Shown in pieces: positions 2,947 to 31,066 of a stretch of 64,000 nt of DNA. The notes under the pieces are model-generated. The model was given only the letters and a program-made list of their open reading frames with translations, was not told where the DNA came from and did not search any database. Numbering within the stretch: position 1 is the stretch's first letter; each line of letters starts with the position of its first letter. Location: positions 1 to 64,000 of the IMG/VR virus record IMGVR_UViG_3300048597_000634, one strand, 5' to 3'. The translations under genes were made by a program, and so were the position numbers.

Positions 2947-3140
2947 CGCTAAAAATTTGACACTCCCTCCGTTAATTGCTGACGCAATCTTAACGGGGGA
3001 TTCTTAGATTCACACCTAAGAGTTTCTGCTTCACAGATTGGTAACTAGGCAAAGCCCCCGTCCCATCATCTCCACAGACGTTTTTGGATACGCTATGCCC
3101 TAGCGCATATTCAGTACCTCGATTCCTGATTACTTGTGCA
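2937..3140 (-). ncRNA. Putative TnpB omega/re-RNA: scaffold overlapping the tnpB 3' end, guide taken from flanking DNA (ATTTTTAGCGGTGACGGCCG...)
   Basis: Established TnpB biology places the RNA across the element's right end, and that end is visible at 2957. The RNA 5' boundary is approximate. Confidence 0.55.
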
Positions 3141-16100: not shown

Positions 16101-19100
16101 ATGAACTGTACAACCCGGCGGTCATCCCGTTGCAGGTCGAATAGGAACATAGATTGTTGCTTAACCGTTCCGTTAGCATAGGATGCCAACCAGAATGCGG
16201 TAGCCATGGCGCCGGCTTGGTCAGGGTTAACACCAGCTTCAGATAGAATGTCAACCAGGTGGGCGGTCTTCTGCTCACGGAAGTAGCGGGCTTTAGACTC
16301 CGCCTCTAGGTTATGGTCGGTACCATTACCATCTACTTTATCGATGTGGATTAACGGAGCATGCCATACTGGGGCGAACTTCGCTTCCATTACAGCGCTT
16401 AGCAAACCCCAAAGTTCCCAACCTAAGTCGTTAACGGCACCTAATACATACTCATAGATATCTGCACAGGCAGTGACTGCGTAGTATGACTGAGGACCGA
16501 CGAAGGGTTTGAACATCTCAGGGATTTCCAACCCAGCTGCCTCGAATACACCGCCTTTAACCATACCGTTGAGGATATCAACGATGGCCTCGGTCAAGCG
16601 ATATACCTTGTAGCTGACACCAACCTGCTGGCTTTGTAGAATTAGAGAGCGCCAGTTGGTGGTGTTATAGGTAGTAGCAAGGACTAGGTGTTTACCTACA
16701 ACTACGCCGCTATCATATTTAACTGTTAGAAGACCAGCTCGGAAGAAGATATTAGCCTTCTTAGACAGGCTGGGGGCGCGCAAATGGTCACCCAAGTAAA
16801 CTTCTTTGATGGCCTGGGCACCAGGACCACCGGCACACATATCACAGCTATCCCATGCCTTGTCTTCGGTAGACACTAGACCACGCAAGCCAGCTACTTC
16901 AGTAACCAGGAACGTAGCACTAACGCCGTCACCGTCAGAGTCACCTTTGGTGATGTCAGTCATAGCAATGACCGAGACCCCGATGGTATAAGGATAGGGG
17001 TTAGCCATCACATCCTTCTTGGTCAATGGGTTATACACCCAAGGACGGTCGAAACAGTAGAAGGTATTGGCGTAGGCTTCTTGAGACTTAGGCATACGAA
17101 GTACCCGAAGCACAGGACCGTCTTTGATTGGACTACGGGTCAAGTGGTTAAACGCTTCACAACGTTCGGGTAGATCCCATACTGATTCACCATGGGCTTT
17201 ATAGTCAGCCCAGGTAGGTACGGCACGGAGGTCTAGTCCGTAGTGCTTAGCCACGCGGCGGGCATTAGCCCATTGGTCATCACCTTCATGGAGCAACATC
17301 ACTCCAGTGGGTAGGTTAGGCATGGCGATTACTTTACCGCCGAAGACCTCACCACCGGAAATAAACTTACGGACACCCTCAGAGGATGCCCAAGACTCCA
17401 TACGACCACACAACTGGTTGGCAATGATTCCGATGCTGCGACCGTCTAAGGAACCCGACAGGACTTCAGCTAAATACGCCTGGAACAAACCGCTAGCAGT
17501 GCTATGACTATTGTCTTCAGCACTACGACCATTGAGGTAATACAGGAACGGAGTCCAGACCTCGATGGATTTACTGACGGTGTAGACTTCACCGCTATCG
17601 GGGTCTACTTTGTATTCTTTGCGGGAAGCATCGATTTGAAAGATGTAGTCTTTGAGGGCATCACATAGCCCACCGAAGTTGGATACATTGCTGACATCAG
17701 CATTACCCAAGACGGCTTTAAGCGTATCGATAATCTCAGCATTGGGTATCCAGGTTGCGGCGCCGGCGCCCTTCTTACCTTCTTCCCATTTGCCTAATTT
17801 GACAACAGTACGGTCATCAATAGCTTTACTGAGCCCAGAGTAAGCACTCAGATGCAGCATTTTAGCCCGCCACATAGAGTTAGTTTTACCGGATAGACGT
17901 TGGTGACTAATTAGGTCTTTAGCCAACTCATCATTACCAATACCCCACGCATCGGTCATAGCCCGGAGGGAACGCATACAGACGTCCATCTGCCCGGAGC
18001 TGTTATTGTTGATGCCCTGACGAGTAGTAGCCGCTTCATAGAGGACTACATCGTAGATGGGGCAGTTCTTACGACCAACCAACATGGTGGACTGCTGAGC
18101 TACTTTAGCGACGCGCCCGGCTTTATTGATGAACAACACGAATGCATTGTCCTTGTCATTGGTGAAGCACTTGTAAGTGTAGTCTTCAGTAACACCGGCA
18201 GCCAGGGACATTACCAAGGCACGAGCTTCCTTAGCGTCGTCAATTAGACGCCATGAGTCGATACCACGGTCAGACATGTCAGTATAGAGACGGTCAATGG
18301 CGTAGCCGAAGTCACCGTGCTCTAGCTCTTCCCACATCGTCCAAACGTTTTCACGCTTGAAGTAGTTGAAGAAGGCAGTTTGAAGCTGCGTGTACAAGGG
18401 TTGAGCAACCATAGATACATGGTCTTCCACCAAATACTCCAGGTGGCGACGACCTTCTACTAATTCGTTGATGTCTTTAGCCATCTCAACCATGGCTAGG
18501 AACCCTGGCTCTTTACAGTCAGGGTTTAGTACCAAGGTGGCGCCGATGACGCTGATTAGACAGCCATCAACGTCAATCTTCATGGCGTCTTGCAAATACA
18601 CCGCGTCAACTGTTTTGCCTGCAGCATTAGGGAGCTTCAGGAATGTAGATTTGACGGGCATTAGGTTAGCCTTAGCCACAGAAGAACGAATCTTGGCTTG
18701 ACGTTCCATGGGTGTGACTTTGAATTCCACCTCCAAGTTCTTGCCAGTAATCTCAGGTGCTACGTGGACACGAACCCATTCCAAGATACCGTCGCCGTTA
18801 TTACCTTCATAGGCGAAGGGTTTACTGGGGGCTAGCTCATCATCGGTATGGACGTTACATACCACAGAACCACCATTGCCGTGGACATACACAGCGGTTT
18901 GAGGGTAGAAGTAGTAGTATTCGATACCACGTACCCGGTGAACCTCGGTCACTAACTCAACATCAGCCAATACACACTCAGGCTGACGGAAGTCCACTGC
19001 CAACTCAGGGCGAACTAAGTGGATATCATCAGCACCGAAACCGACGCCGGGTTGTACTTCGATAGCCCGTTGGGGAATCTCGAAGTTAGCCTGCTCGATG

Positions 19101-22100
19101 TTGGACCCAAAGCCATGGGGCATTTGGTTAGGACCACCAACCCAGGCTACGACACCAGCAGGACCAACGGCGGTCATACCGAGGGCAACACGGATGGCGG
19201 TACCGACGATGGGCTCGGGCTGGGTACTGAACTTATGGCCGGCTTTCACGGCGTAGAAGTTCTCGGGAAGCATCCCAGACCACATTGTATCGATGGGCTT
19301 AACACCACGACCGCTGGTTAAAGCTTTAGCCAACTCAGGTTTGTCTTGACAATTGATATAGCTACCTGATTGGACAGAGTTAGGGGCGCGTAGTAATTGA
19401 CGCTTGGTACCCTTGGCAACCTTACCGTTACTGTTTACGACACAGCTAGTTAGAAAAGCGTCCAAGGATTTGAACTTCGAGTCTGTTAGGAACGCATTAA
19501 CCTTGTCTTGACCGCCCATATCTAGGACGAATTGAGCTTTGACCAACTTATAGACAGCGGGGGCTACTTCTGCCAAGACTTTACAGTTGATAGCAAAGTT
19601 AGGCATTGAATACCCAACGTTCTTGTTGAACGACCAGGTAATACCCAGACGAGACATAGCCTCAGGCAAGAACGTGTCAGCAAACTCAGCGGTGGTCAGT
19701 TTAGCCTGCTTATAATTGGCAGCGTAGGACTTAATTAACTTGTCAGCGTATATACCCCAACAGTTAATCAACGCGTATTTGCCGGTATCACCAACCTTAA
19801 CCACCGGGCTGGGCATGGGGTTGCTGGTATCTAAACCCATAGGAGCCCAGCTATTGGACTCAGCCAAGCGGAAGTTAGCATTCTCTGCCAAGATATTGTC
19901 CGAAGACATGGGGAACATCACCCCAGCATCCTTGTTGAGATACTGGTTGAGGTTGGCTCCCACGGTGGACCAGTCATCTGACGCAGGTAGATGAGCCATT
20001 ACAGGCAATACCACCATGTATAGGTACCGCATGAAGCTACCCATAGAGGACATAGCTTCGGCACTACGGTAAATCTTAGCGGTGTTACCCCGTTCATCGG
20101 TCACCTCATCGTACATAGCTAGCACGACGTTCTTGAACATACGACCCCGGGGCAGGTCAATCATCGTATTGAGTTCAGGAACCCAGGCGAATTCTTTACC
20201 CAGGAAACTGAACACATAACCGTTACCATCCGCCTTGAAGTAGCAGAGGTCATCCTGATGGTTAGTAGCTTCATAGCTACGGAGAATGGCAATCACGTTC
20301 ATAACGTGTTCGGGTTGCCAATCAAAGCCGTGGAAACTGAGGTTAGGATTACAATCAACCTCTGACTTGTTCCCTGTTACGTCTTTGAGGTAGCGGATAA
20401 CGGAGAAGGCGCCTGATACACCATTGGTGCGGGCTTGGACACCCTCAGCATTGAAGCCTGTGGTGAGGTCAAGATTAGCCCAGCTACGAATGTGCTCCTG
20501 ACAGTAGCCAGAGATATCTTTGATGTCAGCCAACTCACGGTTAATCCACATGTTAGACATATGGGTGAGATAGTTAGCCAACTGACCGGCATAACCTTCC
20601 ATATTAGGGGCTGGGGTGGTCACCAAGGGGCGCTCAGGTAGGGCGGTGGTAGTGGGGGCTACTTTTACTTGAGGCGCGGGGGCAGGCTCAGCAGTTACTA
20701 CAACAGGTTCAGTAACGACTACTTGAGGGGCCGCTGAGACTTCGGTAACCGTTTCAGTCGCCACATTAACCACAGGGGCTGCTGCCGCAGATACTTTAGC
20801 CACGGACTGGATAGCATCCAACAGGGTAGCAATCACAGGAGATTGTGTTACTACAGCGGGGGCAGGAGCTACTTCCTTAACTTTCAACCGCGGTCCTTCA
20901 ATCACAGGCTTAGCCGGGGGCAATACCATCTGGCGACCGCCCTGCATCATCACATAAGCCTCATCCGCCCAGTCCATCAGACTACAGATGCGTACCCGTT
21001 GAGGGTCGTCTAAGCCATTACCGGCACGACCCAATTTAAACCGACGGGTAGGTTCATGAACTTCTAAATCAGCAATGTCACCGTAGAAACCACGGGCTAA
21101 CCCTTCGCTGATGCTGGGGTGCCAGGGGCCCAAGACCTTCTCAGTGTAGATATCACTGAGTTGAGGTAAATGGAATACCTCGATAGTTTGGGCAGTCATG
21201 CGTTCATAAGCGAACTCACGACCACGTTCGTACAAGTCAACTTTGGCAGTAGAGCCTTCGACGATAGCTTGACCATCAACTGCCTTAACGGTGAACATCT
21301 GGTCAAACCCTTTGCCCTCCTTGGAGGAGCCAGTGATAGAGGTCACATCAGCTACCACTACAATCCAGTTGCGACCGGGTTGTAGTTTGGCACCCAGACC
21401 CCCTTTGACGGCACAACCACCGGCTTTAACTTCACCGTCAGCCATGATGGCATTCCAGACATCAAGTCGGGCATCGATGATAGCCCGTTGTAGGGTGATG
21501 TTGTCCTCACCTTCGGCGGCTTTGGCTAGGTTAGCCACAGTCATCTGACCGTCTAGCATCACCGACACCTCAGGGGAGATTTCTGGGTATTTCTTCCGTA
21601 GGGTGTTGGGGCGGTTATACACATGGCTTAGCCACATACCACAAGGAGTGGGCAGTCCTTTGTTAAGCGCCGCGCTGGTGCGGAACTTAAGGACAGGTTG
21701 GTCTTTGCTGACCTTCAACAACGAGCTCTCATTGAGGGTTGTGTCTTCACAGACCATAGGCTCACCAAGACGAGGCCATTGCTTCTTACCAAAGTGGCTC
21801 TGGATGGGCAAATTGATATTGCCTTTGAATACTTGACGACCAGAGTCGTCTACATATACACAGCAAAGGCTCACGTAATACCCTAGTGAACGGTCACTAG
21901 ACGCGTGATCAGCCTTGATGGTTGCGGTATGGACAGCGGTCGGCATCAGGGTACCGACCTGTTTTGTTAGTTGGGATAGAGTGTCCATTGTTTCTCCTTG
22001 GTGTGTAGCTTCTAATAGTCCGCTTTTTAGATTGCGGTCGGTAGAAGCGCCATAGTTTAACGACATTTGGAGGTCGCCGGCGCCGTATTGTGCTTTAGCA

Positions 22101-22729
22101 TTAGCTACGATAGCTTTAGCGGCAGCCACAAACGGTTGACCTTTTGCGATCTGAACGATACCACGAACCACGCGTCGCACTATCAAATCCAAAACAGCAC
22201 TTAAGGTAAATGCAGCTCGGTTGGCTACTCGGCGGGCAGCTTTGGCTGCTTTACGGGCTACAGCGTAAACAACAGAACTGTGGCGAGCCTCCATTGAAAT
22301 AATGGTGTGGGCAACAGGAGTGTTGTTAAAGCTGATACGCATACCAGCACGGACAGGGGCGGCAGTCTTAAACAAACGGGCTTGGTCAATCAACTTCTGA
22401 CTGTCCCCGTTAGGGTTGCCTTTCTGATTAAGGCTGATAGTGTAGTTAAGGACAGAGGAGTTTAGGTTTAGTCCAGACAGATTAATGGTGAGTTTGTTAG
22501 TGTTCATAGTTTTTACCTGACTAATGTTTACGGAAGCCGGCTGTTGACTGGAGCCCGTCGAGAGCTGAGCCATAGGCGCTCCACCCTCAACGGACTCATC
22601 TAGACCGGGGTTTTGATGGGACCCCGCCTGGAACCCGTCGGGACTAATTTGAGTCCTCCCGACCGGACTGCCCGCGACTATTTGTAAGGCGCCATCGCTG
22701 GGCGCCATACCGGCAATTGATTTAGTCAT
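13169..22729 (-). CDS. Giant protein (3186 aa): putative single-chain two-barrel DNA-dependent RNA polymerase fused to a C-terminal Pif1/RecD-like SF1B helicase
   Basis: RNAP-like motifs in order: AKIRSSVAKANLMP...LPNAAGKTVDAVY (18671-18694 and following; beta-like), FGGKVIAMPNLP, HLTRSP (TRSP at 17129-17140), TKGDSDGDG (GDSDGD at 16928-16945). Helicase motifs: GEAGTGKT (14540-14563), TATTGRAA, LDEVSML, GDGDQL, NVRQAED, ATTGHSVQGMT, VACSR. Confidence 0.75.
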   Translation of the reverse strand: MTKSIAGMAPSDGALQIVAGSPVGRTQISPDGFQAGSHQNPGLDESVEGGAPMAQLSTGSSQQPASVNISQVKTMNTNKLTINLSGLNLNSSVLNYTISLNQKGNPNGDSQKLIDQARLFKTAAPVRAGMRISFNNTPVAHTIISMEARHSSVVYAVARKAAKAARRVANRAAFTLSAVLDLIVRRVVRGIVQIAKGQPFVAAAKAIVANAKAQYGAGDLQMSLNYGASTDRNLKSGLLEATHQGETMDTLSQLTKQVGTLMPTAVHTATIKADHASSDRSLGYYVSLCCVYVDDSGRQVFKGNINLPIQSHFGKKQWPRLGEPMVCEDTTLNESSLLKVSKDQPVLKFRTSAALNKGLPTPCGMWLSHVYNRPNTLRKKYPEISPEVSVMLDGQMTVANLAKAAEGEDNITLQRAIIDARLDVWNAIMADGEVKAGGCAVKGGLGAKLQPGRNWIVVVADVTSITGSSKEGKGFDQMFTVKAVDGQAIVEGSTAKVDLYERGREFAYERMTAQTIEVFHLPQLSDIYTEKVLGPWHPSISEGLARGFYGDIADLEVHEPTRRFKLGRAGNGLDDPQRVRICSLMDWADEAYVMMQGGRQMVLPPAKPVIEGPRLKVKEVAPAPAVVTQSPVIATLLDAIQSVAKVSAAAAPVVNVATETVTEVSAAPQVVVTEPVVVTAEPAPAPQVKVAPTTTALPERPLVTTPAPNMEGYAGQLANYLTHMSNMWINRELADIKDISGYCQEHIRSWANLDLTTGFNAEGVQARTNGVSGAFSVIRYLKDVTGNKSEVDCNPNLSFHGFDWQPEHVMNVIAILRSYEATNHQDDLCYFKADGNGYVFSFLGKEFAWVPELNTMIDLPRGRMFKNVVLAMYDEVTDERGNTAKIYRSAEAMSSMGSFMRYLYMVVLPVMAHLPASDDWSTVGANLNQYLNKDAGVMFPMSSDNILAENANFRLAESNSWAPMGLDTSNPMPSPVVKVGDTGKYALINCWGIYADKLIKSYAANYKQAKLTTAEFADTFLPEAMSRLGITWSFNKNVGYSMPNFAINCKVLAEVAPAVYKLVKAQFVLDMGGQDKVNAFLTDSKFKSLDAFLTSCVVNSNGKVAKGTKRQLLRAPNSVQSGSYINCQDKPELAKALTSGRGVKPIDTMWSGMLPENFYAVKAGHKFSTQPEPIVGTAIRVALGMTAVGPAGVVAWVGGPNQMPHGFGSNIEQANFEIPQRAIEVQPGVGFGADDIHLVRPELAVDFRQPECVLADVELVTEVHRVRGIEYYYFYPQTAVYVHGNGGSVVCNVHTDDELAPSKPFAYEGNNGDGILEWVRVHVAPEITGKNLEVEFKVTPMERQAKIRSSVAKANLMPVKSTFLKLPNAAGKTVDAVYLQDAMKIDVDGCLISVIGATLVLNPDCKEPGFLAMVEMAKDINELVEGRRHLEYLVEDHVSMVAQPLYTQLQTAFFNYFKRENVWTMWEELEHGDFGYAIDRLYTDMSDRGIDSWRLIDDAKEARALVMSLAAGVTEDYTYKCFTNDKDNAFVLFINKAGRVAKVAQQSTMLVGRKNCPIYDVVLYEAATTRQGINNNSSGQMDVCMRSLRAMTDAWGIGNDELAKDLISHQRLSGKTNSMWRAKMLHLSAYSGLSKAIDDRTVVKLGKWEEGKKGAGAATWIPNAEIIDTLKAVLGNADVSNVSNFGGLCDALKDYIFQIDASRKEYKVDPDSGEVYTVSKSIEVWTPFLYYLNGRSAEDNSHSTASGLFQAYLAEVLSGSLDGRSIGIIANQLCGRMESWASSEGVRKFISGGEVFGGKVIAMPNLPTGVMLLHEGDDQWANARRVAKHYGLDLRAVPTWADYKAHGESVWDLPERCEAFNHLTRSPIKDGPVLRVLRMPKSQEAYANTFYCFDRPWVYNPLTKKDVMANPYPYTIGVSVIAMTDITKGDSDGDGVSATFLVTEVAGLRGLVSTEDKAWDSCDMCAGGPGAQAIKEVYLGDHLRAPSLSKKANIFFRAGLLTVKYDSGVVVGKHLVLATTYNTTNWRSLILQSQQVGVSYKVYRLTEAIVDILNGMVKGGVFEAAGLEIPEMFKPFVGPQSYYAVTACADIYEYVLGAVNDLGWELWGLLSAVMEAKFAPVWHAPLIHIDKVDGNGTDHNLEAESKARYFREQKTAHLVDILSEAGVNPDQAGAMATAFWLASYANGTVKQQSMFLFDLQRDDRRVVQFIVAAAMLVTEAGRAKWHGFNHGPLNSTNVASEEKVRNHKAMTRVTLDYLVKGVSTHEVWANAVSESHCLQLLMDMADPEVLGDLVVGPAPNTALTYTIGADLVAHYESQLTARVGDVDLVELKQTVVDVEVSPTNYMVIDSDDFDLVDPFENIYDDYQPEEYMDITPPSAEEIAMSQAMMAQMMVSEAPAPTVVIDEDEQSTDDMVEAQQAFAVLMSPPPVVVAEAPTQVMAAPTPAVITPVVAPTEDKIFLAKQATVEAEIVSLETRLAKAQALLAKQQEQAKALQKLEDKKAKLSAKLADVVAKLTPEFAAMLGDVTGNEPNEDESDDGEGNVPVTKDDSPKKPDPAPAAAHTITFTPAENALRQSLAETASQPAAAPVTPQVAPSADEDMFIPEEGDYQANMAMFATKVAADPTTNKKATISNKVDEVAAVNTPAPAPAPAPAPTQTQSADDVVANLIKGYAKKSEPKNLIDAKKKARSIPCPPVDDTGATDCQKRFFNAACTGDNIFLSGEAGTGKTYALETMINHWLGLGDKVIVTATTGRAAMNMGVRFDIENLDGYGTFNSVLGLGIGFDEKDAAAMTPYAWSQRMIARGQANDELSVMLHGEKEGQRVHFVLDEVSMLDSRMLWVIWNILYYHNPCIQVILAGDGDQLKVIGKGARDFWQRAVIEGCNGTLENIIENFRCVNLKTNVRQAEDPELAAALRHLSETNEITGVLLERFRLCAEEGLKPSDNLNTTHIRFNNVTVERINRRMTRAMGTETKVYRAEIHGNNGPVSINGDRYPGWVYAFSPIAPVMEFAVGMPVKLRKNRKKDGVLEASNGSRGFITKLCKKSVWVLFEDGKELNIGVERFEGAGKDGQSPGAFYQLPIHPDFATTGHSVQGMTITNEGVISVSQEWKAKDKNRQFIFEEDGEHKTYKVALNDAQWLLVACSRFTKASDIYFNFEGPEDLHWFYQAQGNKDLSYRKWLESKAE
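14762..14796 (+). repeat. (GGGGGC)n hexamer repeat, six G5 tracts; encodes the PAPAPA linker on the - strand
   Basis: Read directly: GGGGG at 14762, 14768, 14774, 14780, 14786, 14792. Confidence 0.9.
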
Positions 22730-22958: not shown

Positions 22959-23022
22959 ACGAAATTAGACGCCCTATAGACGCCGTTAAGGTTAATGACT
23001 ACCGGTGAACATAGTCAGTAAA

Positions 23023-23051
23023 AACCCCCTTCTAACGATTAGAAGGGGGTT
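23023..23051 (-). terminator. Intrinsic terminator
   Basis: Perfect 13-bp stem AACCCCCTTCTAA-CGA-TTAGAAGGGGGTT with a T-run on the - strand. Confidence 0.75.
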
Positions 23052-23059
23052 AAGGTGAT

Positions 23060-23295
23060 CGGTTGCGTAATTTTCAATAATGACAAAACCTATACTGAGA
23101 GGGCGTTTTAGGTCTTAAGCGCAACTATTACGTCCGAACACCTAAGAAAAGCGGCTTCCTCGGAGGCTTAAAAGTGTACGCTTGCGTAGACGCCAATATC
23201 TCTAAAGTATATAGCTGGCTTCGGTTACAGCTCCAAGCTTAGTTGGTTAGAAGCGTACACTAGAGGCTCGTCGATGATATATAGTCGGCTGTCTC
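23060..23295. ncRNA. Candidate structured non-coding RNA between two terminators
   Basis: No ORF. 11-bp inverted repeat AGTGTACGCTT (23173-23183)/AAGCGTACACT (23251-23261), C(UUCG)G-capped hairpin, further hairpins, and a promoter-like motif at 23286-23301. Confidence 0.4.
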
Positions 23296-23304
23296 TCTCA
23301 TAAA

Positions 23305-23340
23305 AGTGACCCCAGTTTCCTTTTGGATTCTGGGGTCACT
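23305..23340 (-). terminator. Intrinsic terminator after the HExxH gene
   Basis: AGTGACCCCAG / CTGGGGTCACT 11-bp inverted repeat. Confidence 0.75.
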
Positions 23341-23806: not shown

Positions 23807-24050
23807 ATTTAACTCCTGCCGAGTGTATCGGTTGTTTGGACGTTAAAAATATGGCCGGGTAGGGCTATCGAGGTGCGGTTGTCTGGGTGCGGCTGTGGTG
23901 GTCTGACAGTGTTGAATACTGTCCTGAGGAAACCGAATTACACGCGAGACACGCCTACACTGGTAGGATCTGGCACTTAAGCACTATGTCTGCGGATAAT
24001 CGGCTGTTATCCTCATAAAAGAGGGGGTAACCTCTATAAGTTACCCTCTT

Positions 24051-24341
24051 TTAGTGCCAGATTTTCTTACTGGCTTTTATGGCAGTACGGGCACATTTCT
24101 CCCATTTCTCTACCATATTGATCCATTCTTTAGAAGGGTTATCCTTCATGGTCATGCGGACCAGCTGCTCAGTCACTTCTAAGGCGTGGATAGCCTCGTC
24201 GAGTACCGCAGCGCGTACTTCGACGTCTTCACAGTCCAGGTCTACCCTGGGCAAAGACGCAGGTGTTACCCCAAAGTCTTTGGCAAAGGCTAGAGCCCTT
24301 ACTGTTTTGATAACGAAGTCTTTATAGTGAGACTTGTTCAC
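24051..24341 (-). CDS. Hypothetical protein (96 aa)
   Basis: ORF track; AGGAG SD before a GTG start. Confidence 0.65.
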   Translation of the reverse strand: MNKSHYKDFVIKTVRALAFAKDFGVTPASLPRVDLDCEDVEVRAAVLDEAIHALEVTEQLVRMTMKDNPSKEWINMVEKWEKCARTAIKASKKIWH

Positions 24342-24422
24342 TGTTTATCTCCTACCGGATTTACCGGCTGTAGGGTCGATAAAAGAGAGGGGGAGAACTC
24401 TTTCGAGAACTCCCCCAAGTCT

Positions 24423-24947
24423 TTACACTACAGCTTGACCGAAGAGATTTTTGATTTCTTCTTCAGTAGCATTAGCAAGCATATCAACGTCAAGCAACTG
24501 GTTTGTTAGCCCAGCTACTAGTTGAGAGCCTAGCTCCTTGTTTTGTTGAGTTACTGCATCGAGGGCTTCGATTTTTGCTTTCGCTTCATCTACTGCCACT
24601 TGTGCCCGTTCTTTGCTAGCTTTAACTTCTACCGCCAATGTCCTCATACGTAGACCAACCGCTTTCGCTGCGTTGACTACATTTTTGGCATCTTGAGCTT
24701 CTTTTTCAGCTTTCTCAACAGACTCTTCTACGCTTTTTATTTTTGCTTCAGACTCCACTTTCGCTTCATCATTGGCTAATTCAAAGGTCGTTAATTTCTC
24801 CACTAAGGGTTGATTAACAGAGTCATCCAAGTTGTAGCTCTTAAGTAGGTTATTAGCCCGCTCCTCTGCAGTAGGTTCCTTATCTTCGACCTTACGACCA
24901 AAAATGTTACCAAACAAAGCAGCTACGTTATTGTTAGTGTTAGACAT
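24423..24947 (-). CDS. Coiled-coil protein, paralogue A (174 aa)
   Basis: Shares MSN.NNNVAALFGN.F.RK and AKNVVNAAKAVGLRMRTLA with 25106-25669. Confidence 0.8.
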   Translation of the reverse strand: MSNTNNNVAALFGNIFGRKVEDKEPTAEERANNLLKSYNLDDSVNQPLVEKLTTFELANDEAKVESEAKIKSVEESVEKAEKEAQDAKNVVNAAKAVGLRMRTLAVEVKASKERAQVAVDEAKAKIEALDAVTQQNKELGSQLVAGLTNQLLDVDMLANATEEEIKNLFGQAVV

Positions 24948-25105
24948 ACTTTTGCCTAGGTTTTACCTAGGGCGAATTTTATGACCATCAACAGCACGAC
25001 ATAGGCGAGGGGAGTCGCACCCCTGCTTATTACCGTCATGCACCCAGCGGCTGTCTCAGTCATAAAAAGACGGGACCTTTTTAGGGGTCCCGAGTCTTTC
25101 AATTG

Positions 25106-25669
25106 TTAGACGATTTTCACGTCAGCTGCCTTTTCAGGCACCTTTACACCAGAAGAAGAACCAAAGAGGGCATTTATCTCCTCTTCAGTGGCGTTAGCCA
25201 GCATATCTAAACTCAATAGAGGGTTGGTTAGACCATCTAAGAGTTGATTACCTAGCTCTTTATTCTGCTTAGTGTTTACTTCCAAAGTTTCGATTTTCGC
25301 TTTCGCTTCTTCTACCGCTTTTTCAGCTTTTTCCTTTGCAGCTTTTGCTTCTATGGCAAGAGTACGCATACGTAGACCAACCGCTTTCGCTGCGTTGACT
25401 ACGTTTTTGGCCTCTAATTCTTTGTCTTCTGCATCTTTGATTGCTTTTTGGGCTTTCTCAATGGTCTGCTTAGAATCAGCTTTCGCGTCATCGACAGACT
25501 GTTCAAAAGTTGCAAGTTTTTGAACAACAGGAGCACTCACAACAGGGTCAAGTTTATAGGACTCAACCAACTTTGCTGCCCGCTCTTCAGGTGTTTCCAC
25601 TTTCTCAACAGTTTTGCGACTGAAGAGATTACCAAATAGAGCAGCTACGTTGTTGTTAATATTAGACAC
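25106..25669 (-). CDS. Coiled-coil protein, paralogue B (187 aa)
   Basis: Tandem paralogue of 24423-24947; GTG start. Confidence 0.8.
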   Translation of the reverse strand: MSNINNNVAALFGNLFSRKTVEKVETPEERAAKLVESYKLDPVVSAPVVQKLATFEQSVDDAKADSKQTIEKAQKAIKDAEDKELEAKNVVNAAKAVGLRMRTLAIEAKAAKEKAEKAVEEAKAKIETLEVNTKQNKELGNQLLDGLTNPLLSLDMLANATEEEINALFGSSSGVKVPEKAADVKIV

Positions 25670-25843
25670 GATGTTAGCCCAAGTTTTACTTGGGACGAAG
25701 TTAATGACCGCAACAACAACTAATAGGCAGGCGTAGGGAGTCGCACCCCATCCTTACCAGCCGTCTTGCACTCTGCTACCAGCGGCTGTTTTGGTCATTA
25801 AATAACCCCCATAGTTTCCTACAGGGGTTGGGTACGTAGAGAT

Positions 25844-26137
25844 TTAGAGCTTATACAGCTCCTTCTCTACGTGATAGGGGAGCGGTCCCCCAAGGAGATT
25901 ATCAAAGGCTTCCCCAGCATTACGCCAAGAATCCGCCACCCGTTCCTCCTCGTCCGACATGCACTCGAAAGCGCATTTGAGGTTCTGTACGGACTCTCCA
26001 GTCAGAAGGCTCAGTACCTCCCAATCAGAGAGCTCACCCGAGCTCCAACGGTGGCCTATATCTAACGGCATATCGCCGTTTTTAACAGCGAATGCGTTAA
26101 CTAGACCAACGTTCATTTGCAAGTTAATGTCATTCAT
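25844..26137 (-). CDS. Hypothetical protein (97 aa from MNDINLQ)
   Basis: Start reassigned to ATG 26137, which has AGGGG upstream. The ORF-track start lies inside a terminator. Confidence 0.6.
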   Translation of the reverse strand: MNDINLQMNVGLVNAFAVKNGDMPLDIGHRWSSGELSDWEVLSLLTGESVQNLKCAFECMSDEEERVADSWRNAGEAFDNLLGGPLPYHVEKELYKL

Positions 26138-26218
26138 GTTTTCCCCTGGCGGATGTACCGCCGGTAAATTACATGAAGAAAAAACCCCCATAGGGGGGGC
26201 TATGGGGGAGTATTTGCT

Positions 26219-26737
26219 CTATATAGATAAAGAGAAGTTGAATACCTTCCCTTTTGAATCGTGCATCTGACCAACCATGTTATAAGCACGGTCTATTAGG
26301 TCTTCTTGTACGTCAGGGTCTAACGTGGAGAAGGATTTAGGTCCATCTACCCAAGTTATTAGGATTACAGCACTTTTTGTAATACCTAGTTGTTTATAAC
26401 AATTACCCAAGCGAGCTAATTTCTCTTCTTTTTGGGATACTTTAGGTGCGTTTAAAGTAACATCAAAAGAATAGAGCTCTCCTTGACCTTGAGGGTCTGT
26501 AAGAGAATCAACAGCGAAGCACTCATCTAACAAGAATGAAGGTTGCACCACATTCCAGTTAATACTCCGCCCTTTTTCCTCAAACCGCCAAGCTATATGC
26601 TTTAGCGTACCTGGACGTTCTGCTTTAGCCAAATCCAACAAAGTGTCACGGCTAAAGATACTGCGTTTGTCGCTAAAGCCTGCAGCGGCTAATATTTCGT
26701 TCCACATGTTTTCTGCTTGTTTTGAAGCTCTAGACAT
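26219..26737 (-). CDS. Hypothetical protein (172 aa)
   Basis: ORF track; AAGGAG SD. Confidence 0.7.
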   Translation of the reverse strand: MSRASKQAENMWNEILAAAGFSDKRSIFSRDTLLDLAKAERPGTLKHIAWRFEEKGRSINWNVVQPSFLLDECFAVDSLTDPQGQGELYSFDVTLNAPKVSQKEEKLARLGNCYKQLGITKSAVILITWVDGPKSFSTLDPDVQEDLIDRAYNMVGQMHDSKGKVFNFSLSI

Positions 26738-26928
26738 TTGGGGTACTCCTTTGACCGCCGAAGTACAGATATCGGCTGTTTGGTCGTTAAAAAGAGGCCC
26801 AAATGGGTTTTGTTATTATTACTCTTTTTATATACCGGTAGTTAGCCCACCCCTCCTATAAACGCGATAATCCCATCCAGGTTTGATAATCTCGTTTATA
26901 AAGAGGTAGGCTAGGGTCAGTTATTTAC

Positions 26929-27150
26929 TTACCAACGACGGCCCTTTCCTACTGAAGGAAAGGCGTCCTGGGCGTCTTTGCCCGTGGGGAGGTTGTCAGC
27001 CTCACGCACAAACTCGTTGTATAGCCATTGGGTGGCCACTTCAGGGGTGGCGCTAATGGTGATGGCTAGGCGAGAGATGCGAACGCTAATAATCTGCATA
27101 ATCAAGACCGCCCATGTAGAGCGGTTAGATAGGTCACTAAAAACCCCCAC
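26929..27150 (-). CDS. Small hypothetical protein (start uncertain, perhaps MQIISV)
   Basis: ORF track. Confidence 0.4.
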   Translation of the reverse strand: MGVFSDLSNRSTWAVLIMQIISVRISRLAITISATPEVATQWLYNEFVREADNLPTGKDAQDAFPSVGKGRRW

Positions 27151-27177
27151 GGCGCAGCCATGGGGGCGTTTTACTAA

Positions 27178-27669
27178 TTAGGGGAAGAAGTGCTTAGTAA
27201 GCACATCACGTAGCTTACTAGCTGCTTCTTCATCACCTTCAGGGTGCACAAGCACCTGTAGGGATTTAAAGGATATCCCTACTTTGTGCCCGCACACCCC
27301 GAAGGTGTACCTATGGGAGCCGTGGTCAACCACATCCACAGCCCCCATAGGTAGACTGTCTATTGCCTCCCTAGGTGAGGCTTTGACTTGCCCCATCTTC
27401 CCTAGGTACCGCCACCGGATGATGGCAGTGGGTGCTACGGACACCCAGGTCTTGTCCCCACAGGTGGTTAGCCCATAGGTGTACCCACTAGGTACTGTCT
27501 CCCCTGTAACGAGGAACCCAGCGGGGTGTGGAGGTGCTTTAACGTCCACCTCAAGGACGAACATATGAGGTCCGTAGTCCTCATATGCGAACCCTTCCAC
27601 CTGTGCCCACACCATAGGGCGTGTGGCTGGGTTGAAGGATTCATCCCATTGGCGTGTAAACACCAACAT
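27178..27669 (-). CDS. Hypothetical protein (163 aa)
   Basis: ORF track; AGGAGG SD 8 nt upstream. Confidence 0.7.
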   Translation of the reverse strand: MLVFTRQWDESFNPATRPMVWAQVEGFAYEDYGPHMFVLEVDVKAPPHPAGFLVTGETVPSGYTYGLTTCGDKTWVSVAPTAIIRWRYLGKMGQVKASPREAIDSLPMGAVDVVDHGSHRYTFGVCGHKVGISFKSLQVLVHPEGDEEAASKLRDVLTKHFFP

Positions 27670-27717
27670 ACTTCATGCCTCCTACCGCACGTAGCGGCTA
27701 TATAGGTCATGAAATAA

Positions 27718-27752
27718 CCCCCTCTATACACCAGGGGAGGCATATAGAGGGG
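27718..27752 (-). terminator. Terminator hairpin with 14-nt loop
   Basis: CCCCTCTATA-caccaggggaggca-TATAGAGGGG; loop identical to that at 28241-28284. Confidence 0.7.
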
Positions 27753-27760
27753 ATTATGTT

Positions 27761-28195
27761 TTATTTGGTGATAAGTACCTCAAAGGCACGACCGTAGCCG
27801 TGCCCTACCACACACCGCCCGAGGTTGGCAGGTGTGTCTTTTACGGCTCGACCCAGCCGTTGGTGCCCCCAGGCCCTGAGGTAGTAGGTGGGAGTGAGTC
27901 TACTACATAGGTGCCTATTTCCCTCATACGAGAAGTCGTAAAGGTCATAGGCCCCCTCCTCCCTACAAGTCAGCCTGCCAAAGGCCCACTCATAAGGAGT
28001 ACCGTATGTGGACACCAGCCCTGGCTGGGCACAGTGGGTGTCTAGGAACTTAGGTAGTTCCAAGGTCATAGACTCCCCACTACCTGCCAAGTAGTGGGTG
28101 AACAGTCTAAGGGTTAGTCTATTTCCTTCACTGCTGAGGACGGCACCACTAGCAAGGATAATAAGACTAACTAAGGCAATGATTACTTTCTTCAT
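27761..28195 (-). CDS. Hypothetical protein with N-terminal signal/TM segment (from MKKVIIALVSL)
   Basis: Start reassigned; ATG 28234 is an alternative. The ORF-track MPPLVYRGG start is terminator sequence. Confidence 0.6.
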   Translation of the reverse strand: MKKVIIALVSLIILASGAVLSSEGNRLTLRLFTHYLAGSGESMTLELPKFLDTHCAQPGLVSTYGTPYEWAFGRLTCREEGAYDLYDFSYEGNRHLCSRLTPTYYLRAWGHQRLGRAVKDTPANLGRCVVGHGYGRAFEVLITK

Positions 28196-28240
28196 AACGT
28201 TAGCCCCTAGGTGTCTAAGGGCGGTATAGTTCATGAAGAA

Positions 28241-28284
28241 AAAACCTCCCCTATACACCAGGGGAGGCATATAGGGGAGGTTTT
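28241..28284 (-). terminator. Terminator hairpin with 14-nt loop
   Basis: AAAACCTCCCCTATA-caccaggggaggca-TATAGGGGAGGTTTT. Confidence 0.75.
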
Positions 28285-28293
28285 TATTAAGGG

Positions 28294-28449
28294 TTAGTCA
28301 CGGGGCATGATTGCCCCCGCTGCCACGATGGCAGTGGCGGCACCGGCGCCGACACCTACCATCTGTGCTGCCACGAGGGCGGACTTAGCCCCTCCGGTCA
28401 GACCGGAGAGGAGGATAAAACCGATAGCAATCTGTGTAATAACTTTCAT
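28294..28449 (-). CDS. Small hydrophobic Gly/Ala-rich peptide (51 aa)
   Basis: Hand-translated MKVITQIAIGFILLSGLTGGAKSALVAAQMVGVGAGAATAIVAAGAIMPRD; lies between a motif copy and a terminator. Confidence 0.6.
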   Translation of the reverse strand: MKVITQIAIGFILLSGLTGGAKSALVAAQMVGVGAGAATAIVAAGAIMPRD

Positions 28450-28651
28450 GATTCATACCGCTCGTAGCGGCTATATAGATCATGAAATAACCTCCCAAGT
28501 TATTCACAAGGGAGGTCTTAAGTAACTGGCTTTAGCCGCCCTAGGCACCAGGAATTTCTCATGTGTGCGTAGGGGGCTATAGGCACTTATACATATACCA
28601 GTCCATTTTCTGCCGCGCATATTTTTGGCTGAGCTTTAGTTATCAACTTTC

Positions 28652-28731
28652 TAATTCCCCGTCCATCCGCTGTTAATTCCCCGTCCATCCGCTGTTAATT
28701 CCCCGTCCATCCGCTGTTAATTCCCCGTCCA
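28652..28731. repeat. 22-bp tandem direct repeat, 3.6 copies (iteron-like)
   Basis: TAATTCCCCGTCCATCCGCTGT at 28652, 28674 and 28696, partial at 28718; degenerate ATTCCCCGTC near 28786 and 28841. Confidence 0.95.
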
Positions 28732-30343: not shown

Positions 30344-31066
30344 ATGGAATTTCACTCTGTTAGTCTGACCAACGAGAACTTAGCTAACTTACCAAACATT
30401 CCCGCTGTATACTTTGTCCGAGACAATGACGGTGAAGTTTTATATGTAGGGCAGTCTCAAGAGTTACACAACCGATGGAAGTACCATAACCTAATAGAAC
30501 GACAACTATCATGTGTAGATTATTGGCGGATGGACCTGTGCTGGTATTCTGGCGCAGAGGATATCTATAAGCTAGAAAAGGAGAAGATAGCTGAGTGGCA
30601 CCCGGCTTGGAACTGCAAAGAAAACAAAGATTATTATCGACCTACCCATAAGCTAGACTTCGTAGCTTTTTCAGTTAAACATGTCAGCTACTACGGAGTC
30701 ATATCTAAGAAGAGAAAGAAAAACGTAACATATAAAGACATCACCAGAGAAAGGGTACTTCTCAGGAAGAAGACTTTTGCCTATGGTGATATACCACGCA
30801 GCATGATTAAATACGAGTCATTCTTAGAGGAATTACGTCTTGAATGCCCTGTAACTTATAAAGACCTTGAGATTATCATGGAGCGCAGAAAGAAAGAAGG
30901 CGAAGATATGTCTCGCTATAAGGTCTTTAAGAACATTCTTTGGCGTAGAGAGAACTGTGGGCGGATATATCGAGAGCGTTATGCAGGCAAAGGCCGCCGC
31001 AAATATCCCGAGAACTTTACCTCTATTAAAGACAAGCTCATACAGCGCCACAAATCAGTAAGTTGA
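30344..31066 (+). CDS. GIY-YIG nuclease-domain protein
   Basis: PAVYFVRDNDGEVLYVGQSQELHNRWKYH motif. Confidence 0.8.
   Translation: MEFHSVSLTNENLANLPNIPAVYFVRDNDGEVLYVGQSQELHNRWKYHNLIERQLSCVDYWRMDLCWYSGAEDIYKLEKEKIAEWHPAWNCKENKDYYRPTHKLDFVAFSVKHVSYYGVISKKRKKNVTYKDITRERVLLRKKTFAYGDIPRSMIKYESFLEELRLECPVTYKDLEIIMERRKKEGEDMSRYKVFKNILWRRENCGRIYRERYAGKGRRKYPENFTSIKDKLIQRHKSVS

What the first reader, a model, noticed from the sequence alone, without database searches (positions are those of the whole stretch)
23807..28483. The motif copies fold into related hairpins that reach the SD/start codon
Seen (- strand): the CCG of the motif is the 5' arm of a short stem with a TA-led loop: CCGA-TACAC-TCGG (23806 gene), CCGG-TAAAT-CCGG (24341), GGCGG-TACAT-CCGCC (26137), CCGC-TACGT-GCGG (27669), CCGC-TACGA-GCGG (28449), GCCGA-N10-TCGGC (26737). 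An outer inverted repeat encloses it: TTTAAC/GTTAAA, TTTATC/GATAAA, TTCATGT/ACATGAA, TTCATG/CATGAA, TTCATGA/TCATGAA, GACC/GGTC. The 3' arm carries the SD or start codon. Established: N4 virion RNAP recognises extruded DNA hairpin promoters. Inference: either hairpin-type promoters for a sigma-independent virion RNAP, or an RNA switch that silences read-through transcripts while promoter-initiated ones, lacking the 5' arm, are translated.
Basis: partly seen in the sequence, partly recalled or inferred. Interest (0 to 1): 0.6.

Follow-up and report, generated by a model that had tools for sequence, protein, structure and literature searches.

The report
Phage terminator-promoter cassettes with start-site masking
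An uncultured 205-kb cyanophage-like virus carries 13 repeated terminator-plus-promoter-like cassettes in front of small early-type genes; many begin with a short hairpin and can fold back over the next gene's start site, probably so that only transcripts started at each gene's own promoter are translated, a design already known from phage T4.

Summary
Confirmed and extended. The minus strand carries 13 copies, not 6, of a ~20-nt box (T-run/TTTNAT, 7±1 nt, ACAR-CCG) between 28,487 and 23,003. Each follows an intrinsic-terminator hairpin. Each precedes a small ORFan gene, an ORF-less unit, or the 78-aa + 3,186-aa operon. PWM and covariance-model scans find no copy elsewhere in the 205-kb genome. 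Related uncultured phages have the same arrays.

- **Inner hairpin:** 25 of 50 copies have a ≥4-bp hairpin whose 5' arm is CCGN (null 1.8±1.3), and the fourth pair changes compensatorily.
- **Outer repeat:** it is copy-specific in this genome (0 of 100,000 permutations) and weaker in relatives. It shows G·U and compensatory changes.
- **Start-site masking:** a gene's own upstream sequence raises the cost of opening its start site by ~1.5 kcal/mol on average, and up to 6.

Best reading: these are PeSL-like terminator-promoter cassettes of a non-σ70 promoter class. Transcripts start just 5' of CCG, often with a terminal hairpin. Read-through RNAs keep the 5' arm and mask the start site, as in T4 e/soc/49/I-TevI.

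The N4-type DNA-hairpin promoter reading is not supported. No start-site data exist and the polymerase is unknown.

The parts
28468..28487 (-). c1 box TTTCATGATCTATATAGCCG, gene start 28449 (51-aa membrane peptide)
   Evidence: Terminator about 28515-28491. Inner hairpin 28471-28457 (GCCGCT-acg-AGCGGT). Outer arms 28487-28479 and 28452-28444 (9 bp). Own upstream sequence raises TIR opening by +6.0 kcal/mol.
28222..28241 (-). c2 box (TTCTTCATG subclass), gene start 28195
   Evidence: Terminator 28268-28244. Inner hairpin 28222-28203, 8 bp with one G·U. Outer arms 28241-28233 and 28195-28187 (9 bp, covering the ATG and codons 2-3). +5.7 kcal/mol.
27695..27714 (-). c3 box, gene start 27669
   Evidence: Inner hairpin 27698-27684 (CCGC-TACGT-GCGG). 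Outer arms 27713-27708 and 27677-27672. +2.4 kcal/mol.
27122..27141 (-). c4 box, gene start 27099 (56 aa)
   Evidence: Terminator 27167-27143. Inner hairpin 27125-27107, 7 bp with one G·U. Outer pairing not above chance.
26773..26792 (-). c5 box, gene start 26737
   Evidence: Inner hairpin 26776-26757 (GCCGA-N10-TCGGC). Outer GACC/GGTC not above chance.
26162..26181 (-). c6 box (TTCTTCATG subclass), gene start 26137
   Evidence: Terminator 26208-26185. Inner hairpin 26162-26148 (GGCGG-TACAT-CCGCC). Outer arms 26177-26171 and 26139-26133 (7 bp). +3.9 kcal/mol.
25783..25802 (-). c7 box, 116-nt leader, gene start 25669 (GTG)
   Evidence: Outer arms 25801-25793 and 25709-25701 (TTAATGACC/GGTCATTAA). 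These arms change compensatorily against c8 and the G1 orthologous leader. A metagenome contig breaks off exactly at 25802.
25048..25067 (-). c8 box, 103-nt leader, gene start 24947 (paralogue of the c7 gene)
   Evidence: Terminator 25092-25071. Outer arms 25067-25059 and 24985-24977 (TTTTATGAC/GTCATAAAA).
24365..24384 (-). c9 box, gene start 24341 (GTG)
   Evidence: Terminator 24416-24391. Inner hairpin 24368-24354 (CCGG-TAAAT-CCGG). Outer arms 24383-24378 and 24349-24344.
24001..24020 (-). c10 box, followed by an ORF-less unit of about 150 nt (24004-23855)
   Evidence: Homologues occur in 7 relatives. The 3' part holds ACAGCCG/ACAACCG/ATAGCCC at 23896, 23882 and 23868, period 14.
23829..23848 (-). 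c11 box, gene start 23806 (152-aa HExxH-like protein)
   Evidence: Inner hairpin 23831-23819 (CCGA-TACAC-TCGG; orthologues have CCGG..CCGG). Outer arms 23855-23847 and 23810-23802. +6.4 kcal/mol. The L002 orthologue shows a compensatory change.
23286..23305 (-). c12 box, followed by an ORF-less unit of about 250 nt that ends at the terminator near 23040
   Evidence: The RNA fold is not unusual (z = -0.43).
23003..23023 (-). c13 box before the 78-aa gene (start 22958) and the overlapping 3,186-aa helicase-domain gene (22729-13169)
   Evidence: Box TGACTA pairs with TAGTCA just after CCGG. In G1 and L002 this is TGACTG/TAGTCA, a G·U pair.
28491..28620 (-). Head of the array: a second-class promoter-like motif at about 28610, then the terminator that precedes c1
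   Evidence: The region is conserved in G001. It is a candidate source of read-through transcripts (inference).

Best explanation
The 13 elements are composite regulatory cassettes. Each has an intrinsic terminator (GC hairpin plus U-run) followed at once by a phage-specific promoter that is not of the sigma-70 type.

The promoter is bipartite: a T-rich hexamer (TTTNAT), 7±1 nt, then ACAR-CCG. Transcription most likely starts within ACAR, and the base before CCG is always a purine. The mRNA therefore begins with CCGN. In about half of the copies CCGN is the 5' arm of a short terminal hairpin, which would shield the 5' end and may also be a protein-binding site. The SD and start codon follow directly.

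The box and the end of the T-run lie upstream of that start. They are complementary to the same gene's start region. In the c7/c8 leaders they are complementary instead to a site 30-40 nt before the start codon. RNA that reads through the upstream terminator therefore carries a 5' arm that masks the start site, whereas RNA begun at the gene's own promoter lacks that arm and is translatable. This is the logic of T4 genes e, soc, 49 and I-TevI, here repeated along an array.

The cassettes also behave as exchange points for gene shuffling, like T4-type PeSLs.

Shown: the motif, its distribution, the hairpin statistics, the copy-specific complementarity, the compensatory changes and the mosaic breakpoints. 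Inferred: promoter function, the start site, read-through, translational silencing and the identity of the polymerase.
For: Motif and distribution:
- There are 13 copies on one strand within 5.5 kb. All are the top PWM scores in the 205-kb genome and nothing comparable lies elsewhere.
- Covariance model R1 hits only the arrays in G000 and G001. It finds nothing in Ma-LMM01 or My-WqHQDG.
- The same arrays lie upstream of the giant helicase gene in G001, L024 and L025.
- Conservation begins at the T-run. The terminator stems upstream of it vary, so no promoter element lies further upstream.
- Sigma-70-like sites are depleted: 2 found against 8.3±2.5 expected. Terminators are enriched on this strand.
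- Position -1 is a purine in 50 of 50 copies. The hexamer-to-CCG spacing is 11±1 nt in 42 of 50.

Inner hairpin:
- 25 of 50 copies have it, against 1.8±1.3 in shuffles. The fourth pair is CCGG in 16, CCGC in 5 and CCGA in 4, each with its matching 3' arm.
- Orthologues switch C·G to G·C (c1 vs G1_672) and A·T to G·C (the c11 family).
- In c10-type ORF-less units the long stem also begins at CCG.

Outer pairing:
- In the window the observed sum is 86-88, against about 64±4 under permutation, and 0 of 100,000 permutations reach it. Over all 50 copies it is 279 against 242±6.4.
- A gene's own upstream sequence raises TIR opening energy by 1.54 kcal/mol over a foreign upstream sequence (Wilcoxon 1.5e-4; permutation p<5e-5; window alone p=0.00085).
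- Evidence that the pairing is in RNA: c7 TTAATGACC/GGTCATTAA, c8 TTTTATGAC/GTCATAAAA and G1 TTTATGACC/GGTTATAAA with a G·U pair. In c11, W has GCCATATTT/AAATATGGC and L002 has TGGGCATATTT/AAATATGTCCA. L025 has UUCG and UACG tetraloops.
- All strong 5' arms end at or upstream of -7, which is upstream of the proposed start.

Precedents: T4 e/soc/49/I-TevI (PMC3014915) and PeSLs (PMC4122927).

Mosaic breakpoints: 25802, 26145 and the joint 25834|27722. The order of c4 and c6 is swapped in G001.
Against: - No transcription start, RNA-seq or metatranscriptome data could be found. Promoter function and the start site are inferred from sequence alone.
- No polymerase or sigma factor can be assigned to the motif.
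- The outer pairing is strong in only about 5-8 of the 13 window copies. It is at or near chance for c4, c5, c12 and c13. It is barely significant within relatives (G1 p=0.04 by run length and p=0.22 by energy).
- In c7, c8 and c13 the 3' arm does not cover the SD or start codon, so TIR masking cannot be the whole story.
- The excess of G·U over A·C is small (5 vs 1).
- All copies share one promoter class, so it is unclear which read-through needs silencing. A different class upstream (motif at 28610) is only a suggestion.
- Predicted energies come from a nearest-neighbour model, not from measurement.
Confidence: 0.5

Rival explanations
1. There is no promoter here. The array is one polycistronic transcript made by a terminator-resistant or antiterminated polymerase. 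Box + ACAGCCG + hairpin is then an RNA element: a processing site, such as RNase E cutting in the U/A-rich linker between two hairpins, or the operator of a phage RNA-binding translational regulator. The ACAGCCG repeats in the c10 RNA would act as a decoy for that protein.
For: - G·U and compensatory changes show that the box is under selection as RNA.
- The hairpin abuts the SD.
- The loop start U-A-C is conserved, and T follows CCGN in 46 of 50 copies.
- The c10 unit carries 3 tandem ACAGCCG-like units, and 2-4 in relatives.
- A different promoter-like motif sits at the head of the array, at 28610.
Against: - Thirteen strong intrinsic terminators inside one operon would need a dedicated read-through mechanism.
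- The linear motif has fixed spacing, an invariant purine before CCG and a T-rich hexamer, which is the shape of a promoter/start signal.
- Structures begin at CCG rather than including ACAG.
- Cassettes with the same layout are known to be terminator plus promoter (PeSLs).
Confidence: 0.2
2. These are N4-type promoters. A virion-delivered, sigma-independent RNAP recognises the inner hairpin, with or without the outer stem, extruded from supercoiled DNA.
For: - In c1 and many relatives the inner hairpin can be drawn as a 5-6 bp stem with a 3-nt loop (CCGGT-ACG-ACCGG). From my own knowledge, this resembles N4 early promoters.
- The phage encodes two giant proteins. One has a GDxDGD motif that is invariant in 24 homologues.
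Against: - No T7/N4-like RNAP domain is found by Pfam or PHROGs.
- The hairpin is missing in about half of the copies.
- The SD starts 0-2 nt after the stem, so an N4-like start downstream of the stem would delete it.
- The outer arms have large internal loops or lie about 75 nt apart, which is unfavourable for cruciform extrusion.
- UNCG loops and G·U pairs are RNA features.
Confidence: 0.06
3. The repeats matter mainly as recombination substrates, as PeSL-like or integron-like cassette junctions. The inverted repeats would then be by-products of repeated exchange rather than functional folds.
For: - Metagenome contigs diverge exactly at box or hairpin borders, and one joins the end of the c6 gene to the c3 promoter.
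- Gene order and content differ between the window and G001, while the cassettes persist.
Against: - Exchange does not explain the copy-specific complementarity to each gene's own start codon region.
- It does not explain the compensatory or G·U changes.
- This reading is compatible with the best explanation rather than exclusive of it.
Confidence: 0.12
4. The inverted repeats are chance or compositional artefacts: the T-run pairs with A-rich start regions, and CATG is a palindrome.
For: - Four boxes contain TTCATG. This pairs with any ATG followed by AA.
- The effect is weak in relatives.
Against: Permuting partners among copies keeps composition and motif unchanged, yet the observed value is never reached. 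c7, c8, c9 and c11 use other sequences.
Confidence: 0.03

Closest known systems
PeSLs (promoter-early stem-loops) of T4-type phages (Arbiol et al. 2010, PMC2839356; Comeau et al. 2014, PMC4122927)
   Same: Small composite terminator stem-loop plus promoter cassettes. They are repeated between small non-essential ORFan genes in a plastic region, and indels and gene shuffling occur at the cassettes.
   Different: - The promoter part is not sigma-70-like (T-rich hexamer + 7 nt + ACARCCG).
- The host is apparently a cyanobacterium, and the phage is unrelated to T4.
- The cassettes additionally carry a 5'-terminal hairpin and complementarity to the next gene's start region.
- Mini-circle formation was not examined.
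TIR sequestration in T4 genes e, soc, 49 and I-TevI (review PMC3014915)
   Same: The SD or start codon is paired with an upstream strand that overlaps the gene's own promoter. Longer transcripts from upstream are silent, and transcripts from the proximal promoter lack the 5' strand.
   Different: - In T4 it is a few isolated genes and a known early-versus-late switch. Here it recurs in up to about 8 of 13 adjacent cassettes of a single promoter class.
- The source of read-through and its timing are unknown.
- Nothing has been tested experimentally.
N4 virion RNAP hairpin promoters (own knowledge; N4 vRNAP context in PMC13434306)
   Same: A short GC stem with a small loop next to the start of early-type genes, in a phage with giant proteins.
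   Different: - No N4/T7-like RNAP is detected.
- The hairpin is optional.
- The hairpin probably lies in the transcript rather than upstream of it.
- The signatures point to RNA, not DNA.
5'-terminal stem-loops of phage and bacterial mRNAs (T7 class III transcripts, ompA; own knowledge)
   Same: A hairpin beginning within the first few nucleotides of the transcript, which protects against 5'-end-dependent decay.
   Different: Here the first loop bases (U-A-C) are conserved and the stem abuts the SD, so a protein-binding role is also possible. Stability was not measured.

Membership tests
N4-type hairpin promoter | Phage encodes a virion RNAP with a T7-like single-subunit polymerase domain | tested here: not met
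   PF00940 is not found in the genome (the control genomes cannot ring for this family). Neither giant ORF hits a vRNAP PHROG or Pfam family. Divergent domains could escape detection.
N4-type hairpin promoter | Every promoter has a 5-7 bp stem and 3-nt loop hairpin as the recognition element | tested here: not met
   Only 25 of 50 copies have a stem of 4 bp or more from CCGN (6 of 13 in the window). Loop lengths are 3-14 nt.
N4-type hairpin promoter | Transcription starts a few nt downstream of the hairpin, which forms in the template DNA strand | not testable with these tools
   No RNA data are available. Indirect evidence against: the SD begins 0-2 nt after the stem in c3, c9, c11 and many relatives. 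UNCG loops and G·U pairs favour RNA.
PeSL-type terminator-promoter cassette | A stem-loop terminator directly adjoining a promoter, repeated many times | tested here: met
   11 of 13 boxes follow a hairpin of -12 to -28 kcal/mol plus a T-run. Promoter function itself is inferred.
PeSL-type terminator-promoter cassette | The promoter is a sigma-70-like early promoter (-35/-10) | tested here: not met
   The motif is about 20 nt with no -35/-10 pair, and position -11 of the T-rich hexamer is never A. Sigma-70-like sites are depleted in the region (2 vs 8.3).
PeSL-type terminator-promoter cassette | Located among small, variable ORFan genes, with indels and shuffling at the cassettes | tested here: met
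   The genes have no Pfam hit and only weak PHROG hits. c3 and c5 have no G001 homologue, and c4 and c6 are swapped in order. Contig breakpoints fall at 25802, 26145 and 25834|27722.
T4 e/soc/49/I-TevI-type TIR sequestration | The SD and/or start codon base-pairs with an upstream strand | tested here: met
   Met for c1, c2, c3, c6, c9 and c11. Not met for c4, c5 and c13. In c7 and c8 the 3' arm lies 30-40 nt before the start.
T4 e/soc/49/I-TevI-type TIR sequestration | The proximal promoter lies in or after the 5' strand, so its transcripts lack that strand | tested here: inconclusive
   All strong 5' arms lie at -24 to -7 relative to CCG, which is inside the box. The start site is inferred, not mapped.
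T4 e/soc/49/I-TevI-type TIR sequestration | Longer upstream transcripts exist and are poorly translated | not testable with these tools
   No RNA runs hold this sequence.

The most novel reading that the evidence does not exclude
The box-ACARCCG signal would be the promoter of a previously unrecognised phage-encoded RNA polymerase. That polymerase would lie in the 5,341-aa protein, possibly delivered with the virion. Its GDxDGD motif is invariant across 24 giant homologues and resembles the catalytic DxDGD of two-barrel RNAPs (crAss gp66, QDE-1). The ORF-less c10 unit, with its tandem ACAGCCG repeats, would act as a decoy or sponge for the factor that reads this signal. Together this would be a self-contained early-expression module with built-in translational insulation.
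Probability: 0.15. Interest if true: 0.8.

Novelty: new variant of a known kind. Interest (0 to 1): 0.5.

Why it matters
It would define a new promoter class and regulatory cassette for a clade of uncultured jumbo cyanophage-like viruses that encode 3,000-5,000-aa proteins. Nothing is known about transcription in this clade.

It would show that the T4 device of hiding a start site from read-through transcripts can be used systematically along a gene array. It would also extend the PeSL idea, in which regulatory cassettes double as recombination linkers, beyond T4-type phages and sigma-70 promoters.

In practice, the 20-nt motif and covariance model R1 give a handle for annotating early regions in metagenomic relatives. 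They also supply a defined template for testing which protein transcribes these genes.

Tried and rejected
**Searches for relatives that found nothing**
- Megablast of the region against phage records: no match.
- The search for related loci with three proteins in viral contigs, and with a protein alignment in metagenome contigs.
- Relatives came instead from protein look-ups plus encoding contigs and from a DNA pattern scan (16 of its 17 loci were chance hits).

**RNA evidence**
- No RNA run holds the stretch.
- The two DNA metagenome runs gave only mosaic contigs.

**Other RNA classes**
- Rfam: nothing above threshold.
- tRNA scan: none.

**Polymerase identity**
- Pfam, PHROGs, PDB sequence search and the ESM Atlas all gave nothing for the 5,341-aa protein.
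- The AlphaFold model of residues 3480-4100, built with 24 homologues, was poor: pLDDT 62, and below 50 around the motif.
- Foldseek on that model gave only coiled-coil noise. The RNAP idea is therefore untested, not refuted.
- Rpb1, Rpb2 and T7 RNAP Pfam families are absent from the genome.

**Readings considered and dropped**
- Integron attC-like sites (TTTAAC/GTTAAA resembles the core sites): dropped because the arms differ from copy to copy.
- Lambda nut/boxB-like antitermination sites: not pursued, because 13 sites each placed after a terminator do not fit that layout.

**Weak or inconclusive tests**
- G·U versus A·C counting as an RNA/DNA discriminator: too few cases (5 vs 1).
- Pairing of CCG in 60-nt folds: only a modest excess (0.68 vs 0.54, p=0.013).
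- A single consensus structure for the outer stem could not be written, because its register differs between copies.
- The c12 RNA shows no unusual fold.

Full report
**Context**

The window is the first 64 kb of a single 205,544-bp contig with 46% GC. IMG/VR lists it as a virus record, classed 'provirus' and 91% complete.
- It is a tailed phage, with a Mu-type portal and an HK97-type capsid protein.
- Its nearest named relatives are distant. The capsid protein is 30% identical to those of Microcoleus phage My-WqHQDG and the Microcystis Ma-LMM01 group.
- Two giant genes lie on the minus strand:
  - 13169-22729 encodes 3,186 aa with a C-terminal Dda/RecD-like helicase.
  - 35305-51330 encodes 5,341 aa with no family hit.
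- The 3,186-aa protein is therefore not an N4-like virion RNAP by any test I could run.

**The observation**

The repeated unit is larger and more numerous than reported.
- There are 13 copies (c1-c13) on the minus strand, with boxes from 28487 to 23003.
- Each copy has four parts in order:
  - a GC-rich terminator hairpin and T-run, strong in 11 of 13;
  - a box of about 20 nt;
  - CCG;
  - a downstream unit.
- The downstream unit is a leader and small gene in ten copies and an ORF-less unit in two (c10 about 150 nt, c12 about 250 nt). In c13 it is the 78-aa gene that overlaps the start of the 3,186-aa gene.
- The box is bipartite: a T-rich hexamer (TT[TC]NAN), 7±1 nt, then A-[C/T]-A-R-CCG. 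The hexamer-to-CCG distance is 11 nt in 24 copies, 10 in 9 and 12 in 9. Eight copies belong to a TTCTTG/TTCTTCATG subclass without the hexamer.
- The base before CCG is a purine in 50 of 50 copies. T follows CCGN in 46 of 50.

**Distribution**

- A PWM built from the copies ranks twelve of the 13 as the top twelve scores in the whole genome. The weakest copy, c2, comes just below three weaker outside hits.
- Covariance model R1 (box plus hairpin, 19 seed sequences) hits only these arrays in G000 and in a 101-kb relative, G001. It finds nothing in Ma-LMM01 or My-WqHQDG.
- Sigma-70-type promoter matches are depleted in the region: 2 found against 8.3±2.5 expected.

**Relatives**

Direct DNA and word-based searches failed. 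Three other routes gave eight related sequences:
- homologues of the c11 gene;
- homologues of the giant helicase protein;
- a pattern scan.

All eight have the same layout on the gene strand, directly upstream of the giant helicase gene where that gene is present. I curated 50 copies in total.

**Inner hairpin**

- 25 of 50 copies have a perfect stem of 4 bp or more whose 5' arm is CCGN, with a loop of 3-14 nt (18 have 5-nt loops).
- Shuffling the downstream 26 nt gives 1.8±1.3, with a maximum of 8 in 2000.
- The fourth pair covaries: CCGG/CCGG in 16, CCGC/GCGG in 5 and CCGA/TCGG in 4.
- On the seed alignment this pair reads GC 14, AU 3, CG 2. The covariation score is 0.308 against 0.159 shuffled. 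Those seeds were chosen for pairing, so only the covariation counts as evidence.
- Orthologues switch pairs. c1 has CCGC..GCGG and G1_672 has CCGG..CCGG. The c11 family goes from CCGA..TCGG to CCGG..CCGG.
- Other copies have different hairpins that also start at the G of CCG (c2, G1_909), or long stems that begin at CCG in the c10-type units.
- The hairpin is thus a frequent feature but not an obligatory one, whereas the linear motif is always present.
- In the more distant L025 the loops are UUCG and UACG tetraloops.

**Outer repeat**

- I took the longest Watson-Crick run between each box region and its own leader. Summed over the 13 window copies it is 88, against 64.2±4.1 when boxes and leaders are re-paired. 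None of 100,000 permutations reaches it.
- With all 50 copies the sum is 279, against 242±6.4, and 0 of 20,000 permutations reach it. Inside single relatives the signal is weak (G1 p=0.04, L025 p=0.05).
- The best cases in the window are c1, c2, c7, c8 and c11 (9 bp each), c6 (7 bp), and c3 and c9 (6 bp).
- c4, c5, c12 and c13 are at chance by this measure.
- The 3' arm covers the start codon in c1, c2, c6 and c11. In c3 and c9 it lies between the SD and the start. In c7 and c8 it lies 30-40 nt upstream of the start.

**RNA or DNA**

Three orthologous or paralogous leaders keep the pairing through change:
- c7: TTAATGACC/GGTCATTAA.
- c8: TTTTATGAC/GTCATAAAA.
- G1: TTTATGACC/GGTTATAAA, with one G·U pair.

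Further points:
- In the c11 family the stem runs into the second codon. The window has GCCATATTT/AAATATGGC and L002 has TGGGCATATTT/AAATATGTCCA, again with one G·U.
- c13 has TGACTA/TAGTCA where G001 and L002 have TGACTG/TAGTCA.
- These changes, the UNCG loops and the 75-nt arm spacing in c7/c8 favour pairing in sense-strand RNA over a DNA cruciform.
- The overall G·U versus A·C count is too small to carry weight (5 vs 1).

**Effect on the start site (computed)**

- Opening the window from -12 to +6 around the start costs on average 1.77 kcal/mol more in an RNA that starts 62 nt upstream of CCG than in one that starts at -1.
- As a control, I built chimeras carrying the upstream 61 nt of other copies. 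A gene's own upstream sequence costs 1.54 kcal/mol more than a foreign one (Wilcoxon 1.5e-4; permutation p<5e-5; window alone p=0.00085; G1 alone p=0.22).
- The largest effects are c11 +6.4, c1 +6.0, c2 +5.7 and c6 +3.9. The c11 orthologues give +4.4 and +4.5.

**Interpretation**

- Conservation starts at the T-run and the upstream terminator stems vary. Nothing further upstream can therefore serve as a promoter for these units.
- Either the box is the promoter, or there is none and the array is read through from the head.
- The promoter reading fits these features:
  - placement after terminators;
  - one box per gene;
  - strand and cluster specificity;
  - the invariant purine before CCG;
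  - structures that begin at CCG.
- It also matches known terminator-promoter cassettes (PeSLs).
- With a start in ACAR, the 5' arm lies upstream of the start in every strong case (positions -24 to -7). Only read-through RNA would then carry the arm.
- A possible source of read-through from another class exists. A second, different promoter-like motif recurs before genes downstream of the giant gene. It also sits at 28610, ahead of the terminator that precedes c1.

**Why not N4**

- No N4/T7-like polymerase is detectable.
- The hairpin is optional.
- The conserved CCG sits in varying structural contexts.
- The SD follows the stem at once, so a start downstream of the stem would lose it.

Early transcripts of the crAss-like virion RNAP show no common motif, and the P23-45 virion RNAP uses an AT-rich linear motif. 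Hairpin promoters are therefore not a general property of virion polymerases.

**Polymerase**

The polymerase is unknown.
- The 5,341-aa protein has a GDYDGD motif at residue 3645. The motif is invariant in 24 giant homologues of 18-72% identity. It resembles the two-barrel catalytic motif, which I say from my own knowledge.
- The structure model is poor and matches nothing.
- A sigma-70-family gene with regions 1.2 and 2 is cut by the contig start. It might serve either promoter class.

**Cassette exchange**

- Contigs from two aquatic metagenome runs match pieces of the array and diverge at cassette borders:
  - at 25802, the first base of the c7 box;
  - at 26145, just after the c6 hairpin;
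  - at a joint that links the end of the c6 gene to the c3 promoter.
- Between the window and G001, six genes are orthologous. c3 and c5 have no G001 counterpart, and c4 and c6 are in swapped order.
- The c7/c8 leader is conserved in G001 in front of a protein with no detectable similarity.

**Verdict**

Its most likely meaning is a PeSL-like array of non-sigma-70 promoter cassettes with 5'-terminal hairpins and T4-like masking of start sites in read-through RNA. The promoter role, the start site and the silencing are inferences that one 5'-end mapping experiment and a few reporter constructs would settle.

Noticed in passing
window 23855-24004 (-), units at 23896, 23882, 23868: The ORF-less unit after box c10 is conserved in 7 relatives. 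Its 3' part carries 2-4 tandem ACAGCCG/ACAACCG/ACAGTCG units about 14 nt apart. This is the same heptamer as the promoter core, but without the T-rich box. It could be a decoy or binding array.
   Followed up: partly
window (-) 12965, 12875, 12108, 11635, 10788, 9783, 8463, 7844, 28610: A second recurrent promoter-like motif, [G/T]AAAAAG-A-NN-A-N-T-A-R-[T/A]-GG, lies about 25-40 nt before start codons downstream of the giant helicase gene and once at the head of the c1-c13 array. L024 has the analogous GCAAAAAAGTGGAGTAA. L025 has yet another class, TTTTGCTCG...GGACAAAGAAGAGAGAATG.
   Followed up: partly
window 35305-51330 (-): A 5,341-aa ORF with no family, PDB or Atlas hit. GDYDGD at residue 3645 is invariant in 24 giant homologues (3,000-5,300 aa). 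An R-x-G-x-P block about 60 aa upstream and GLLGKTYNTVVP / QQFLRDAALKPK blocks downstream are also conserved. The AlphaFold model was too poor to judge.
   Followed up: partly
window 13169-22729 (-); relatives P0009-P0011: A 3,186-aa protein with only a C-terminal Dda/RecD-like helicase recognisable. Homologues of 3,400-4,500 aa in relatives add NADAR, DUF4326, DUF7831 or amidoligase domains.
   Followed up: no
window 28652-28731: A perfect 22-nt tandem repeat (3.6 copies) inside a non-coding stretch of about 340 nt just upstream of c1. Parts of that stretch are conserved in G001.
   Followed up: no
window 23035-23287 (-): Box c12 is followed by about 250 nt with no ORF of 40 aa or more, ending at a strong terminator near 23040. 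The unit is absent from G001 and L002. Its predicted fold is not unusual (z = -0.43).
   Followed up: partly
window 1-861 (-): A sigma-70-family gene (regions 1.2 and 2) runs off the contig start. The frame does not continue sensibly across the contig ends, and there are no terminal repeats.
   Followed up: partly
window 2990-4270 (-) and 30344-31066 (+): An IS605-type OrfB/TnpB gene and a GIY-YIG endonuclease gene. These are mobile-element passengers in the phage genome.
   Followed up: no
window 25669-25802 and 24947-25067 (-); L023 11035-11170: The roughly 100-nt leaders of c7 and c8 share conserved internal hairpins (GGGGTGCGACTCCC; GTCCCAAGTAAAACTTGGGC). The same leader occurs in G001 in front of a protein with no detectable similarity to the c7/c8 proteins.
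   Followed up: partly
window 27676-27669 and 28455-28449 (-): Out-of-frame ATGs lie 6-7 nt upstream of the real starts of the c3 and c1 genes. The c3 one opens an 11-codon upstream ORF. Both lie inside the 3' arm region.
   Followed up: no
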